64,000 nt of DNA from contig NC_133620.1 in the NCBI RefSeq assembly GCF_048593235.1, forward strand, positions 453,993,261-454,057,260, in the 5' to 3' direction. This stretch comes from Sminthopsis crassicaudata (lineage: Eukaryota). Positions 21,907 to 64,000 of the stretch are shown here, in pieces; the first letter of the stretch is position 1; every line of letters starts with the position of its first letter. Below the pieces are notes generated by a model that saw nothing but the letters and a program-made list of their open reading frames with translations, did no database searches and was not told where the DNA came from. A program made the position numbers and the translations under genes.

Positions 21907-22109
21907 NNNNNNNNNNNNNNNNNNNNNNNNNNNNNNNNNNNNNNNNNNNNNNNNNNNNNNNNNNNNNNNNNNNNNNNNNNNNNNNNNNNNNNNNNNNNNN
22001 NNNNNNNNNNNNNNNNNNNNNNNNNNNNNNNNNNNNNNNNNNNNNNNNNNNNNNNNNNNNNNNNNNNNNNNNNNNNNNNNNNNNNNNNNNNNNNNNNNNN
22101 NNNNNNNNN
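21907..22109. other. Assembly gap (203 N) in NXN intron 5
   Basis: Run of n characters. Confidence 0.99.
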
Positions 22110-42866: not shown

Positions 42867-43529
42867 CTAAAGGGACAAAGCAGGAGTTCACACTGAACAC
42901 CGGGACGCTCCCTGATCAGCTCCTGGCCCAACCAACCACGAGCCGCCCGAGGCGTCCCCTACCGGCCGGCGCGGACGGCAGAACGCCAGGCAGCTCCCCC
43001 AGCTTTGCCCTTTATGCAGGCCCAATGGTGAGCATTCTCCCGCCACACAGAGCTACGTTTTCTCATACCCACGTGACGCTCCCTCTTCAAACCCCCACTT
43101 ATTGAAGACCTCAAGGGTCCTGCCTCCTAGAGGTGCCTCAGATACCGCCTGCAGATCCGAGTCACCTCGGGGGGCGCGCTCCGGCCTGCGTTCTCGGAGA
43201 TTCTGACCCCCAGCCCCGCTCAGTGTTCTCAGGGAGATAACAAGCTGAGGGGCCTCGCGCTCTGCGGGCAGGGATCGGAAAGAGCCTGTTTGGTAAAGTT
43301 CTTCCACTGCCGCGCCGGTCTCGGAGCCAGGTCCTGACCACTTCACGGGGCCTTTAGTGAATAACTGATGATTATGAGACGAAAGGCAGCCTGAGGTGAC
43401 TGGGAAGCCAGAACCAATTAGACTGAGTTCGGATCCCGCCTGCCACCTGTTCCGGGGCACCCTCCTCCGGAGGCCCCCACAAGTGAGGCTGAGGCGACGG
43501 CGGGCTGACGGCCACGCAGAGCCACTGAC

Positions 43530-43774
43530 CCATTATTCCTTGCGGCGCCACGAGGTCGGACCATTCCTTGATTTCCTCGAACTTCACCTTGACGAGGCTG
43601 GCCCCTCTGAGCGTCTCCACGGGCAGCTCCTTCACGTACTCCAGCCGGCTGAAGAAGACGGTCTGGGGCGCGGCGCCGGCTCTCAGGGCGTCAGCAATCA
43701 GCCGCCGGCCCTCCAGCAAGATCTTCCCCTTCTTCTCTCGGAAGGTCCGAGACTTGACGATCGTCATCACCTTG
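43530..43774 (-). CDS. MRM3: MRM3 exon 2
   Basis: ccgtag|C AAG GTG ATG...ATA ATG G|gtcagt; 245 bp, KVMTIVKSRTFREKKGKILLEGRRLIADAL...WSDLVAPQGIM. Confidence 0.96.
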
Positions 43775-43949
43775 CTACGGGGAGAAGAAAAACACGGGCC
43801 GAGACCCGCCCGTGAGGCCGGACGCGAGGGTGCCCTGTGGCGCCAGAGGGAGGGGACCGGCCCCACACCCCAGCTCTGCCCACGACACGGGCAGTGAGAT
43901 GAGGGGCGTCAGGCGGCTGCCAGAACCCCGAGAGCCCCTCGCTCTCTCC

Positions 43950-55552: not shown

Positions 55553-55618
55553 GCAATGGCAGCAGACAAAAGTGATGAGTGGTTTGCTAAAAAGAAAATA
55601 CCGAAGGCTTCTGGATAA
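55553..55618 (+). CDS. GLOD4: GLOD4 exon 9 (terminal coding exon)
   Basis: ggatag|GCAATG...GGATAA; AMAADKSDEWFAKKKIPKASG*; the nine exons total 918 nt = 305 aa plus stop. Confidence 0.96.
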   Translation, partial: AMAADKSDEWFAKKKIPKASG

Positions 55619-59479: not shown

Positions 59480-60296
59480 TGTGTTATAATACCTATACAA
59501 ATTGCTGTCTTGGCAAGGGTGAAGGTAAAAGAGAGAAGTAAGAAATTTGAAATTCAAAATCTTATAAAAATAAATGTTGAAAACTATCTTTACATGTAAT
59601 TTGAAAAATTGAAATTTAAAGTAGGCTGTTGTGTAGGATGTTTCTCTGTAAGGGGGAGGGGAAAGGATACTGGGGATAACTATAGTGTAAGAAATAGATG
59701 TCATTGAAATTCAAAGACCCCAGGTTTTGGGGATAAAAACTGCTGGGAAAATTGGCAATTAGCATGGCAGAAACTAGGCATTGACCTACATTTAACACCA
59801 TATATCAAGAAGGTCGAAATGGGTTTATGATTTAGACAGTGATATTATAAGCAAATTAGAACAAAGGATAGTTTACCTCTCAGATCTGTGGAGAAAGAAG
59901 GAATTTATGGCCAAAGAATTAGAATTCATCATTGAACAAAAAATAAATAATTTTAATTAAGTTAAAAATCTTTGTACAAACAAAAGAATCCAGACAATAG
60001 AAGGGAAGCAATAAACTGGGAAAACAATTTTTACATTCAAAGCTTCTGATAAAGGCCTCATTTCTAAAATATATAATTGACTCAAATTTTAAGAATTCAA
60101 GGCATTTTCCAGTTGATAAATGGTCAAAGTTTATGAATAGACAATTTTCAGATGAAGAAATTAAAACCATTTCTAGTCATATGAGAAGGTGCTCTAACTC
60201 ACTATTGATAAAAGAAATGCAAATTAAGACAACCTTGAGGTACCCACTACACACCTCTCAGATTGGCTAAGATGACAGACAGGAAAAGATAATGTG
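59480..60296 (+). mobile_element. L1 3'UTR remnant followed by an internal ORF2 fragment
   Basis: aatgttgaaaactatctttacatg tail at about 59575; aaactgctgggaaaattgg...ataaaggcctcatttctaaaatata...atgcaaattaagacaac ORF2 motifs at 59735-60290. Confidence 0.8.
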
Positions 60297-60784: not shown

Positions 60785-60790
60785 TTTATT
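60785..60790 (-). terminator. Candidate DBIL5 polyadenylation signal
   Basis: tttatt on + (AATAAA on -), about 100 nt after the DBIL5 stop codon. Confidence 0.65.
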
Positions 60791-60892: not shown

Positions 60893-61153
60893 TTAACACT
60901 GTCTGCTCTTTAGCTCTTCCACTTTGGACACGTAGACCCTCATGGCGTCCAGCTTGGACATCCCTTTGCGGCAGTTCCAAGCTTCCCACTTGGCTTTGGC
61001 TTTGAAGTCGGTGACTTCTGGGCAGGGGATGTTGATGTCCCCAACGGTGGCCTGCTTGTAGTAGCTATACACTATCAGTTTCTCCTCGTCACTCACGGGG
61101 CCTGTCAGCTGCTTAACTGCTGCACATGCCAATTCAAATTCTACCTGGGCCAT
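60893..61153 (-). CDS. DBIL5: Diazepam-binding inhibitor-like 5 / endozepine-like peptide (acyl-CoA-binding protein family), intact, single coding exon
   Basis: 86-aa [48 protein letters not shown]...[30 protein letters not shown]. The ACBP motifs and ELP-type N-terminus (QVEFExAC, GPVSD) are present, and it lies between GLOD4 and GEMIN4 as recalled for human DBIL5P. Confidence 0.9.
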
Positions 61154-62759
61154 CAGATGCTACTGGTCGTAAAGGTGGGCTTATCTGTCGGTAGCTCTAG
61201 GGGAAAGGAAACTTGGTCTTCAAGGGCTAGAAGAGAAGAAATTGCAAGAGAACATGACTCCGGGCCGTGGGCAGAAGGGGACGATTAGTGCCGCGGACCT
61301 AAGCGGTATCGGGGAGCGCTGGAGAGTCTGAGCAAGGCTGGCCGGAGCGGCAGCGGGCCCGGATGGGGCCTGGGGCAGGGAGTCAGTGTCGAAGGCTCGG
61401 GGGTCTTGGAGAACTTGGGGATCAGTGTGTCTAAGGCAGTGAGGCATCAGAGTTCTTGGACCGCAGGGGGGCCTTTGTGGGACCCCAAAAAAGGTGAGGG
61501 CTCAGTAAAATAACGACACGTGTGGGTGTTTGCATGGACACATGCTGCTCAGCACCGAGCTTAGTGTGTGTTGAGGAGCTCCTTCGGTGTGAGATCCAGA
61601 GGTGACTTCATACTGAAAAGAGAACCTGCGAGTGCAGGAGCCAAGGCTGGGGCGCTCTCCCCCTTCCCCACTCTTTTTATTGAGATTCTCGTGATGCGGT
61701 GAACCGCGCGGGATCGCAGACGGGAAAAGCCGAGTTCAGAGGCAGCCTCCACACTCCAGCCGTGCGCCGCTCGGCCTGCCTCAGTTTCCTCAACTGCAAA
61801 ATGGGGATATGATGCTCCCGGCACCTCCTCAGATGAGATCACACATGGGGAACTCCCAGTGAGGGTGCCTGGGCTGCTCAGAGGTCCGGGAGGGATCCGG
61901 CAGGGCTTCTCAGCCACCATCCAGTGCCCGGAGAAAATGCTGCTTCTCCCGCGGAGCTTCCATCCTGCTCTCCCGGCAACAATGACCTTCCCACGGCCTA
62001 ACCGTCCTCCGCGTGTGGTCCTGCCTTAGTTAGGCCTGCACACCTCTGACCGCCCTCTGCCTGGCGGCCCTTAATGGGACAAGTCATCTCAACAGGTGAC
62101 AGTGTGTCCACAGAGGCCTGGGAACCCCCGGGAGGGGGGAGGGGCCAGGGGGGAGGAGACTCAGTTTCCTCTCTCTGGACACCTCAGCCTGGAATCCTGC
62201 CTTCTGCCCAATAACGCACGGGCGGGCCTTTCTGCTGCCCCCTGGCGTGGAGGACCAGCCACACAAAATGCACTAAAGGTCCGACCTCAGGGTTGGTCTC
62301 GGTGCGGGAAGCCCCCGTCCCCCAAGGCCAGGCCCGCCTCACTCAGGAGTAAGAGTGGGGGCGGGGCACACAAGGTTCCCAGGGCCACAACAGGAGAGGA
62401 AAGAGCTTGAGGGGTCCTTCTGTTCTCTGTGGGAGGGGCTGGGGGGGGCGTTCTCTATGGGGCTGCTGTGTCTGTGTGAAGAGGTGGTGTCCAGAGGAGC
62501 ACCCCTGTGTCTGTGGGAGGGGCGTCTAGAGGGGCACTATGTCTGTGGGAGGGGCGTCTTACAGAGGCATTTTATGTGTTTGGGTGGAAGAGTCTAGAAT
62601 GAGTGGGAGGGTGTGTCTGGATGGGAGGGGCTCTAGTGGGCCACTGAGTGGGAGGGGCGTCTAGAGGGGCGCTCTGTGTGTCTGGGTGGGAGGGGCATCT
62701 CCGTCTATGTCGCTGTGCTCAGGTCAGGTCAAGATCAGGTCAAGTCAGGGTCAGGTCGG

Positions 62760-63580
62760 GTCATGTGCGCACGAGCGCACGCCAGGCCGCCCGTTAGCCG
62801 CTACTTACTCGAAGACTCCTTGGTTGATGATCCGGGCCGGTAGGGGGCGCTGTCGGGGCGGGGAGGGGGAAGGCAAGGGAAGGGGAGGGAAAGGGGAAGG
62901 GGAGGGGAAGGGGAGGGGGAAGGGGAAGGGGGAGGGAAGCCCCTCTAGGCCGCACTGGGTCTCGTTGGCTGGATCAGGCACCGGTACAAGAGAAAAGGGG
63001 AGAAGGAGGAGGGTTTGGAGGAGCGGACACGGCCGCAGCCGAGAAGGCCGGAGGCGGAGCTGGGACTGCGGGCCGGGCTGCCGCGCGCAGGGCTTAGCGG
63101 CGCTCCCCATTGTGCGCTGGCGCCCGCGCCACAATCCTCGGGAGCGGGCCTCGGGCGGGCGCGGCGCGGGCCCGCGGTGGGGGCGGGGAGCGGGCAGCCC
63201 CGCAGGGCAGCGCTGCCGCCGGGGACCGGAGCCGCCGCCATCGCCATGGACCTAGGTGAGCGAGCCGGGCGGGATCGGGGCCCCCGCCGGGCGGCCCCCC
63301 CGCCGCGCTCCTTCGGGCGCGGGCACGGGCGAGCATGCGCGCTGAACTCCGCCGGGCTCCCGCCTCCGCCGCCGGCCCCGCTCGGTCTCCGGCCTTTCGG
63401 CGGGACACCGGCGGGAGCACCGCGGCCGAGTCGGGAGGGCCCCCCCGCGGGGAGGGAACGGCGCCCCCAGAGTAGCGAGCCGAGGGCTCAGCCCGGCCCC
63501 CACCACGTGCTGGGCTCCCGGCGCCCCAGGCGGGAACGGGGCTGGGCCTGCGACCCTCCCCCTCCCCCGCTCCCGTACGG
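62760..63580. promoter_or_regulatory. CpG island at the GEMIN4 5' end, probably shared with DBIL5
   Basis: Very high GC and CpG density with many GGGCGG boxes around the GEMIN4 ATG. Confidence 0.8.
63246..63255 (+). CDS. GEMIN4: Gem-associated protein 4, first coding exon (MDL-G; the rest lies beyond the window)
   Basis: gccgccatcgccATGGACCTAG|gtgagc: strong Kozak context, CpG island, 10-nt coding exon matching the recalled GEMIN4 start MDLG, and synteny. Confidence 0.85.
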
Positions 63581-64000
63581 ATTAAAAAAAAAAAACAAAA
63601 AAAAAACACGCTCGACCACACACACGGGGCCGCACTCGGGGCCGCAGGGACCCCTGACTCCCAGGAGTTTAGCGGGTTAGCCCGCCAGAATGTTCCACCC
63701 CTGCCCGTGGTGCAGCCTGAGCTAAGGAGACAGCCCCTGGCCGTGGGAGAGCCCCCGGGCCACGTGGGAGCTTGTGCAAAGTAAACGATGGGGGAGGGGT
63801 GACCCTAGAGAAGGCCGCGCTTGAGCTGTGGGTGAAGGAGGAGACTGGGAGTCCTGGGGACGCCTGAAATCTTGAGAGGAAAAGGTTCTGGCCTCCCCTC
63901 CCCCCCAGGCTCTTTCAAAAAGGTGTCCCCGCTCCGCTTCCTACTGATCCCTGCGCCCTCCCAAGGTGTCCCTGCCACACAAGTTAGCCAAGCTTTTCCT

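What the first reader, a model, noticed from the sequence alone, without database searches (positions are those of the whole stretch)
60893..61153. Intact DBIL5/ELP retrogene in a marsupial at the syntenic GLOD4-GEMIN4 position
Seen: an uninterrupted, intronless 86-aa ACBP-family ORF with an AATAAA about 100 nt downstream, lying tail-to-tail with GLOD4 and head-to-head with GEMIN4. Established (recalled): DBI has a multi-exon CDS; ELP/Dbil5 is a spermatid-expressed ACBP paralogue that is intact in rodents and cattle and a pseudogene (DBIL5P) in human at this locus. Inference: the retroposition predates the marsupial-eutherian split, and the gene has stayed under selection in this lineage.
Basis: partly seen in the sequence, partly recalled or inferred. 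Interest (0 to 1): 0.7.

Follow-up and report, generated by a model that had tools for sequence, protein, structure and literature searches.

The report
Marsupial DBIL5 acyl-CoA-binding gene, already annotated
This is a real, intact, well-conserved marsupial copy of the small acyl-CoA-binding gene DBIL5 (ELP/ACBD8), which is sperm-specific in rodents; public databases and a 2020 phylogeny already include it, and the gene family goes back to early amniotes rather than arising as a new retrogene in early mammals.

Summary
Window 60893-61153 (-) is an uninterrupted 86-aa ACBP-domain ORF (Pfam E=1.3e-26). AATAAA lies 102 nt past the stop. The gene is tail-to-tail with GLOD4, which tools confirmed. 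GEMIN4 is only inferred, from a CpG island and a 10-nt candidate first exon.

A tree places the protein inside marsupial DBIL5 (100/92), sister to eutherian DBIL5 (100/99) and far from marsupial DBI copies. Orthology is therefore supported. Ten full-length marsupial orthologues in the databases searched here, and an opossum one in a published supplement, are intact. Between marsupial orders they are as conserved as housekeeping DBI, so selection is supported.

It is not new. This exact protein is in NCBI and UniRef, NCBI names DBIL5 in nine other marsupials, and Islinger et al. 2020 (PMC7057175) state that ACBD8 occurs "in mammals including marsupials".

The retrogene inference is only partly right. 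Turtles, crocodilians, tuatara and two squamates have proteins in the same clade (100/98). An AU test rejects therian DBIL5 grouping with mammalian DBI (p=0.018). Turtle isoforms imply a DBI-type intron after codon 3. A lizard gene model fuses the gene to its neighbour TLCD3A. The single-exon coding sequence in therians is therefore more likely a later intron loss in an old paralogue.

The parts
60893..61153 (-). Complete single-exon coding sequence of DBIL5/ELP/ACBD8 (86 aa + TAA)
   Evidence: ORF list; Pfam ACBP E=1.3e-26; 95% identical to Tasmanian devil DBIL5; exact protein already in NCBI/UniRef; AF2 model is a four-helix bundle, mean pLDDT 81.3
60785..60790 (-). AATAAA polyadenylation signal, 102 nt after the stop codon
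   Evidence: Read directly from the sequence; use not shown, because no reads were laid
61154..61227 (-). 5' flank with three candidate splice acceptors; exon 2 would start at 61226, 61196 or 61162. The last is 9 nt before the ATG, like the rodent intron that ends just before the ATG.
   Evidence: Sequence; rodent gene structure from PMC2711954. Inference only, no transcript evidence
62721..62763 (-). Five TGACCY nuclear-receptor half-sites in 43 bp on the gene's sense strand, 1.57 kb upstream of the ATG; possible GCNF-type element or just a degenerate short repeat
   Evidence: the only such cluster among 110 sites in 64 kb; a GCNF site is reported in the rodent ELP promoter (PMC2711954, PMC2853129). 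Function not tested
63001..63600 (.). CpG island, presumed GEMIN4 promoter (possibly bidirectional), with a candidate GEMIN4 first coding exon ATGGACCTAG|gt at 63246-63255 (+)
   Evidence: GEMIN4 identity rests on recall plus the gene list in PMC6029155
55553..55615 (+). Last coding exon of GLOD4, the tail-to-tail neighbour
   Evidence: upstream GLOD4 exons confirmed

Best explanation
The ORF is the marsupial orthologue of DBIL5 (endozepine-like peptide, ELP; 'ACBD8'). It encodes a roughly 10-kDa cytosolic four-helix-bundle protein that binds acyl-CoA esters. It is a functional gene kept by purifying selection throughout marsupials. By analogy with rodents, it is most likely transcribed in late (post-meiotic) male germ cells. 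Its promoter would lie between the ORF and the GEMIN4 CpG island, probably with a short non-coding first exon and an intron ending close to the ATG. The gene lineage is an old amniote paralogue of DBI and ACBD7 that has stayed in the GLOD4 / GEMIN4 / TLCD3A neighbourhood. The single-exon coding sequence seen in therians is most likely a derived state: coding introns were lost in place, for example by recombination with a reverse-transcribed mRNA. It is not the footprint of a new DBI retrocopy landing there. Shown here: identity, orthology, intactness, conservation and fold. Inferred: acyl-CoA binding, testis expression, promoter layout and the intron-loss route.
For: Family and fold: Pfam ACBP E=1.3e-26; end-to-end match to solved ACBPs; AF2 helices 2-14, 22-37, 50-60, 67-85. 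The ligand-contact residues known from bovine ACBP (F5, Y28, Y31, K32, K54, Y73) are present as F6, Y29, Y32, K33, K55, Y74; all six are invariant or nearly invariant across 21 therian DBIL5 proteins. Orthology: 70-77% identity to eutherian DBIL5 against 51-56% to DBI and 49-52% to ACBD7. In the tree the window falls in marsupial DBIL5 (100/92*), joined to eutherian DBIL5 (100/99*), while the 7 marsupial ACBP/DBI-type proteins in the tree (two named 'ACBP-like') group together (88/91) inside the amniote DBI clade (95/91*). Position: downstream of GLOD4 and tail-to-tail with it. Selection: 10 of 10 full-length marsupial proteins are intact, and a full-length opossum protein is in a published supplement. 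Identity between marsupial orders is 86-96.5%, against 86-88.5% for DBI in the same species. The 24 variable sites are mostly conservative swaps. A neutral simulation at d=0.2 gives 64% identity and only a 7% chance of keeping the ORF (the value of d is assumed). Old origin: sauropsid proteins join the clade at 100/98*, and NCBI names them DBIL5 in turtles and Rhineura. AU test: p=0.018 against therian DBIL5 + mammalian DBI as one clade. Turtle DBIL5 isoforms and DBI isoforms all diverge at the same column, just before AEF(D/E)K. The lizard model P0408 is a TLC domain plus a complete DBIL5-like ACB domain. Rodent biology and gene structure: PMC2711954, PMC2853129, PMC6842137.
Against: There is no transcript evidence for any marsupial. 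The 18 runs that hold the stretch are of unknown type, with none on record as RNA. No paper in the library links DBIL5 with opossum. No CRE half-site occurs within 2.1 kb upstream, although CREM activation is reported for the rodent gene. The intron-loss route rests on indirect evidence: isoform divergence points and a gene-model fusion, not sauropsid DNA. Residue Q3 is shared by therian M-x-Q and ancestral M-S-Q. That fits loss of all coding introns, so a fully processed cDNA intermediate is as possible as partial loss. The tree has only 87 columns, and the branching order of DBI, ACBD7 and DBIL5 is unresolved.
Confidence: 0.88

Rival explanations
1. One reading: a fully processed DBI mRNA was reverse-transcribed and inserted between GLOD4 and GEMIN4 in a stem mammal or stem therian, creating DBIL5 as a new retrogene.
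For: The coding sequence is in one exon. DBI and turtle DBIL5 show an exon junction after codon 3. The rodent gene has no coding intron (PMC2711954). Residues M-x-Q at the start look like the spliced M-S-Q of DBI.
Against: Turtle, crocodilian, tuatara and squamate proteins join the therian DBIL5 clade at 100/98*. The AU test rejects therian DBIL5 + mammalian DBI as one clade (p=0.018). The lizard orthologue is modelled together with TLCD3A, i.e. in the same neighbourhood. No poly(A) remnant is visible downstream, although decay would be expected anyway.
Confidence: 0.08
2. An older retro-origin: the whole DBIL5/ACBD8 lineage began as a processed or partly processed copy of DBI or ACBD7 in a stem amniote or earlier, and the turtle junction after codon 3 is a retained or secondarily gained intron.
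For: The DBIL5 clade has a long stem (0.31) and unresolved relations to DBI and ACBD7. Only one coding junction is demonstrable in turtles; nothing is known of introns 2 and 3.
Against: The turtle junction sits at exactly the DBI intron-1 column, and several alternative first exons splice into it. That is the expected result of a DNA-level duplicate and an unlikely coincidence for intron gain.
Confidence: 0.2
3. A marsupial-specific DBI retrocopy that happens to lie here, or a decaying relic whose ORF is open by chance.
For: Marsupials carry extra DBI-clade copies that NCBI names 'ACBP-like' (P0293 in devil, P0338 in bilby).
Against: Those copies group with marsupial DBI and not with the window. 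The window is only 56% identical to devil DBI. The ORF is intact and 86-96.5% conserved across marsupial orders.
Confidence: 0.01

Closest known systems
Eutherian DBIL5 / endozepine-like peptide (ELP) of mouse, rat and cattle
   Same: Same clade (100/99*). 70-77% identity. Same length (86-87 aa). Shared motifs [31 protein letters not shown] and GMSK-DAM. Single-exon coding sequence. Same position next to GLOD4.
   Different: Marsupials keep NIPCP (Cys44) and end in ...SRQC or similar rather than ...KKKEAG. Marsupial-eutherian identity is lower than for DBI (72.6% against 83.2%). Testis-specific expression, the 5'-UTR intron and the GCNF/CREM control known in rodents are untested here.
Marsupial DBIL5 entries already in NCBI/UniRef (devil, antechinus, brushtail possum, sugar glider, monito del monte, koala, wombat, tammar, bilby; opossum in the PMC7057175 supplement)
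   Same: The window's own protein is an exact database entry (P0045). It is 84-95% identical to the others.
   Different: Nothing of substance. Koala and wombat carry an 18-aa acidic C-terminal extension after losing the stop codon.
Sauropsid DBIL5-like proteins ('ACBD8-related' in Islinger et al. 2020)
   Same: Same clade (100/98*). Shared NIPCP/NI(S/A)CP and GMSK motifs. The lizard copy is linked to TLCD3A.
   Different: Only about 59% identical to mammalian DBIL5, against 83% for DBI over the same split. They keep the DBI-like ...KKKYG(A) C-terminus and apparently an intron after codon 3.
DBI/ACBP (ACBD1) and ACBD7
   Same: Same Pfam domain, same fold and same ligand-contact residues.
   Different: Separate, well-supported clades. 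Multi-exon coding sequence. Housekeeping or brain expression (from the literature).

Membership tests
ACBP family (Pfam PF00887), small soluble form | ACB domain scoring above the curated threshold over its full length | tested here: met
   93 bits against a cut-off of 28.3; profile positions 3-76 of 76
ACBP family (Pfam PF00887), small soluble form | Four-helix up-down-down-up bundle | tested here: met
   AF2 model with helices 2-14, 22-37, 50-60, 67-85; mean pLDDT 81.3, pTM 0.72. No fold search was run.
ACBP family (Pfam PF00887), small soluble form | Acyl-CoA contact residues (bovine F5, Y28, Y31, K32, K54, Y73; roles taken from established ACBP structural work) | tested here: met
   F6, Y29, Y32, K33, K55 and Y74 align to them; all six are invariant or at least 90% conserved in therian DBIL5
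ACBP family (Pfam PF00887), small soluble form | Measured binding of acyl-CoA esters | not testable with these tools
   Needs recombinant protein and ITC or a similar assay
DBIL5 / ELP / ACBD8 orthologue group | Groups with DBIL5 and not with DBI or ACBD7 in a tree | tested here: met
   100/92*, 100/99* and 100/98* nested clades
DBIL5 / ELP / ACBD8 orthologue group | Position between GLOD4 and GEMIN4 | tested here: inconclusive
   The GLOD4 side is confirmed. The GEMIN4 side rests on a CpG island, a 10-nt candidate exon and recall.
DBIL5 / ELP / ACBD8 orthologue group | Coding sequence in one exon, with the sole intron ending just before the ATG (rodents, PMC2711954) | tested here: inconclusive
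   The single-exon coding sequence is met. Candidate acceptors lie 9, 43 and 73 nt upstream of the ATG, but there is no transcript evidence.
DBIL5 / ELP / ACBD8 orthologue group | Expression in late haploid male germ cells | not tested
The run types are unknown.
Retrogene (processed copy of a multi-exon parent at a new locus) | Coding sequence lacks the parent's introns | tested here: met
   Uninterrupted ORF, while DBI isoforms show a junction after codon 3
Retrogene (processed copy of a multi-exon parent at a new locus) | Poly(A) tract remnant downstream | tested here: not met
   No A-rich tract after the AATAAA. Target-site duplications were not searched for. Both marks would be expected to have decayed at this age, so this is weak evidence.
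Retrogene (processed copy of a multi-exon parent at a new locus) | No intron-bearing orthologue at the same locus in outgroups (i.e. the insertion is new) | tested here: not met
   Indirect. Sauropsid proteins fall in the same clade, turtles show a coding junction, and the lizard copy is linked to TLCD3A. Sauropsid DNA could not be fetched.

The most novel reading that the evidence does not exclude
DBIL5/ACBD8 is a DNA-level paralogue of DBI that has stayed next to TLCD3A, GEMIN4 and GLOD4 since before the mammal-sauropsid split. The therian 'retrogene look' would then come from in-place loss of its coding introns through a reverse-transcribed mRNA, in the stem of therians or of mammals. That would make it a dated example of retro-mediated intron loss being mistaken for retroposition. 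The squamate and tuatara members found here also fill a gap: the 2020 phylogeny reported that no squamate sequences could be retrieved.
Probability: 0.45. Interest if true: 0.3.

Novelty: already known. Interest (0 to 1): 0.15.

Why it matters
The practical value is small. The gene is already annotated, and its presence in marsupials is published. The useful outcome is a correction: this is not a therian-era DBI retrogene but a member of an amniote-wide third small-ACBP lineage. Marsupials have kept it as tightly conserved as housekeeping DBI, while humans and some other eutherians lost it. If sauropsid loci confirm the in-place intron-loss reading, the locus would be a neat textbook case, but it would not open a new field.

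Tried and rejected
I therefore had no orthologue DNA, no codon-level dN/dS and no direct synteny check in other marsupials, monotremes or sauropsids.

Transcript start, any 5'-UTR intron, the poly(A) site and tissue of expression remain untested.

3. The look-up of sequencing runs: 18 runs from 7 studies hold the stretch, but all are typed only as a guess and none is on record as RNA. I do not count this as expression evidence.

4. The first word search returned no DBI at all, probably because the query shares [10 protein letters not shown]-type words with ACBD7 rather than DBI. That briefly suggested an ACBD7 parent. The tree leaves the parent unresolved.

5. I considered a junction after ELKKK in DBI, based on odd C-termini (P0130, P0144, P0238), and rejected it. 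Those proteins look like stop-codon read-through into the 3' UTR in DBI copies.

6. A resemblance between the turtle DBIL5 alternative N-terminus (MWDNHL...) and a DBI alternative N-terminus (VWGDLWLL...) is too weak to use.

7. The wombat Ensembl N-terminal extension (P0052) looked by eye like a read-through of upstream DNA; I ran no check, so I drew no conclusion about an intron.

8. Literature searches found no paper that lists Dbil5 together with retrogene terms or with opossum. Burton et al. 2005 is not held.

9. P0015, P0152 and P0236 may derive from human or ape sequence. P0015 and P0152 were each displayed once. All three were left out of alignments, trees and further searches.

10. 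The GLOD4 and MRM3-like exons were searched exon by exon, by reference.

Full report
**What is in the sequence**

The ORF is exactly as described. It runs from 61153 down to 60893 on the minus strand, ATG to TAA, 86 codons, with no interruption. It scores 93 bits against Pfam ACBP (E=1.3e-26), covering almost the whole profile. It aligns end to end with solved bovine and human ACBP structures at E around 1e-26. An AlphaFold model built on 21 DBIL5 sequences gives the four ACBP helices (2-14, 22-37, 50-60, 67-85; mean pLDDT 81.3).

The residues that contact acyl-CoA in bovine ACBP are F5, Y28, Y31, K32, K54 and Y73; their roles come from established structural work, not from a test here. In this protein they are present as F6, Y29, Y32, K33, K55 and Y74. 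All six are invariant or nearly invariant in therian DBIL5. AATAAA lies at 60785-60790 (-), 102 nt past the stop.

**Neighbours**

GLOD4 is on the plus strand. Two exon-bearing ORFs match PDB GLOD4 chains at E=1.8e-21 and 2e-30, and a third matches Pfam GLOD4_N at E=5.3e-24. The last coding exon is 55553-55615. The two genes are therefore tail-to-tail.

An MRM3-like exon (Pfam E=1.9e-11) lies at 43372-43866 (-), upstream of GLOD4 on the opposite strand.

These exons were searched one at a time by reference.

GEMIN4 could not be verified, because its long coding exon would lie beyond base 64000. The window does contain a strong CpG island at 63001-63600, and inside it ATGGACCTAG followed by a gtgagc donor at 63246-63255 (+). 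That matches my recollection of GEMIN4's MDLG start. A published list of the human region reads 'FAM57A, GEMIN4, and DBIL5P' (PMC6029155).

**Identity**

The word search returned proteins that NCBI names 'diazepam-binding inhibitor-like 5': tammar 92%, koala 85%, eutherians 70-76%. ACBD7 of birds and reptiles came in at 52-57%.

The exact window protein is already in NCBI and UniRef (P0045). Its 90% cluster and the tammar cluster together hold DBIL5 from devil, antechinus, brushtail possum, sugar glider, monito del monte, koala, wombat, tammar and bilby. The window is 95% identical to the devil protein, so the species is probably a dasyuromorph.

I built a maximum-likelihood tree of 72 small ACBPs (87 columns, LG+C20):
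- The window falls inside marsupial DBIL5 (100/92*).
- That clade joins eutherian DBIL5 (100/99*).
- Both join sauropsid DBIL5-like proteins (100/98*).
- The seven marsupial ACBP/DBI-type proteins in the tree (two of them named 'ACBP-like') group together (88/91) inside a separate amniote DBI clade (95/91*).
- ACBD7 forms its own clade (100/99*).

Orthology with eutherian DBIL5 stands.

**Selection**

No orthologue DNA could be fetched, so I could not compute dN/dS. The indirect evidence is strong:
- All ten full-length marsupial proteins retrieved here are intact, and a full-length opossum protein is printed in a published supplement.
- Between marsupial orders DBIL5 is 86-96.5% identical, against 86-88.5% for housekeeping DBI in the same species.
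- The 24 variable positions are mostly I/V/L, K/R, S/T or D/E swaps.
- In a neutral simulation of this ORF at an assumed 0.2 substitutions per site, identity drops to 64% and the ORF survives only 7% of the time, even before counting indels.

Between marsupials and eutherians DBIL5 has diverged faster than DBI (72.6% against 83.2%). The gap is wider between mammals and turtles (59% against 83%).

**Novelty**

None. Besides the database entries, Islinger et al. 2020 (PMC7057175) define this lineage as 'ACBD8'. They state that it is 'found in mammals including marsupials' and that similar sequences occur in Archosauria and Testudines. Their supplement prints the devil, opossum, wombat and alligator proteins.

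The exhaustive search and a word search with a turtle protein found members of this clade in many turtles (named DBIL5 by NCBI), in crocodilians, in tuatara, in the amphisbaenian Rhineura and in the lizard Hemicordylus. The lineage is therefore at least as old as amniotes.

An AU test rejects the best tree in which therian DBIL5 and mammalian DBI form one clade (delta lnL 39.6, p=0.018).

Two indirect observations bear on the mechanism:
- **Turtle intron.** Alternative turtle DBIL5 isoforms (P0421, P0423, P0424, P0349) all leave the canonical sequence at the same alignment column, immediately before AEFEK. Alternative DBI isoforms of mammals and a turtle diverge at that same column. The turtle gene thus appears to keep the DBI-type first intron inside its coding sequence. 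A fully processed retrocopy would not have it.
- **Lizard synteny.** NCBI models the lizard protein as isoforms of TLCD3A. Isoform X1 (P0408) consists of a truncated TLC domain followed by the complete DBIL5-like ACB domain. TLCD3A (FAM57A) is the gene listed just before GEMIN4 in the published human gene list; that the two names denote one gene, and the expected strand, are from recall. The lizard gene therefore lies close to TLCD3A, downstream of it on the same strand, which is the arrangement expected for this locus.

Taken together, an old paralogue that stayed in place and lost its coding introns in the mammalian line is more parsimonious than a DBI retrocopy landing there.

This part remains inference. 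I had no sauropsid DNA. The therian M-x-Q start resembles the spliced ancestral M-S-Q, so a cDNA intermediate of some kind is still likely. The branching order of DBI, ACBD7 and DBIL5 is also unresolved.

**How it probably works**

In rodents ELP/Dbil5 is a cytoplasmic acyl-CoA-binding protein made at high level in late haploid male germ cells. Its only intron ends just before the ATG, and its promoter has a GCNF site and responds to CREM (PMC2711954, PMC2853129, PMC6842137).

In the window, three candidate acceptors lie 9, 43 and 73 nt upstream of the ATG. Five TGACCY half-sites are packed into 43 bp at 62721-62763 on the sense strand, the only such cluster among 110 sites in the window. This cluster is the scan's separate finding s1-189235. 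No CRE half-site occurs in the 2.1 kb upstream. None of this shows expression.

I worked beside those places and sent none of their letters to any search tool. The 18 runs that hold the stretch are of unknown type. Three proteins that might derive from human or ape sequence (P0015, P0152, P0236) were left out of all comparisons.

**Verdict**

It is ordinary and already known. The 'retrogene predating the marsupial-eutherian split' wording understates the gene's age and probably misnames the mechanism.

Noticed in passing
window 62721-62763 (-): Five TGACCY nuclear-receptor half-sites in 43 bp, the only such cluster among 110 sites in the window. It lies 1.57 kb upstream of the DBIL5 ATG, at the edge of the CpG island. 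It may be a GCNF-type element or a degenerate short repeat. Same as scan finding s1-189235.
   Followed up: partly
window 63001-63600, with 63246-63255 (+): Strong CpG island (GC up to 0.82, CpG o/e about 1) containing ATGGACCTAG|gtgagc, a candidate GEMIN4 first coding exon. The identification rests on recall of the MDLG start.
   Followed up: partly
window 62870-62960: A C/T-rich low-complexity tract of about 90 bp, (CCCCTT)n-like on the - strand, between the half-site array and the CpG island.
   Followed up: no
They lie in a SINE-like stretch upstream of the ORF. Nothing further was done with them.
   Followed up: no
window 60133-60270 (+): Short ORF that looks, by eye, like a LINE-1 ORF2 fragment, between GLOD4 and DBIL5. 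No search was run on it.
   Followed up: no
window 21907-22109: Run of 203 N (assembly gap or masked). Left untouched.
   Followed up: no
window 43372-43866 (-): Exon with an MRM3-like substrate-binding domain (Pfam E=1.9e-11), on the strand opposite to GLOD4, next to GC-rich sequence at 44-47 kb.
   Followed up: partly
P0002, P0051 (koala, wombat DBIL5): Both are 104 aa. The stop codon appears to have been lost, and translation runs into the former 3' UTR, adding an acidic tail (...TEDTEEED).
   Followed up: partly
P0408 / P0127 (lizard Hemicordylus capensis): NCBI's 'TLCD3A' isoforms are a fusion model: a truncated TLC domain plus a complete DBIL5-like ACB domain, or the ACB domain alone. 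The DBIL5-like gene seems to be unannotated as such in this lizard.
   Followed up: partly
P0293 (devil), P0338 (bilby): Extra DBI-clade 'ACBP-like' proteins lie on the same chromosome-scale contigs as each species' DBIL5. They may be DBI retrocopies. Their distance from DBIL5 is unknown.
   Followed up: no
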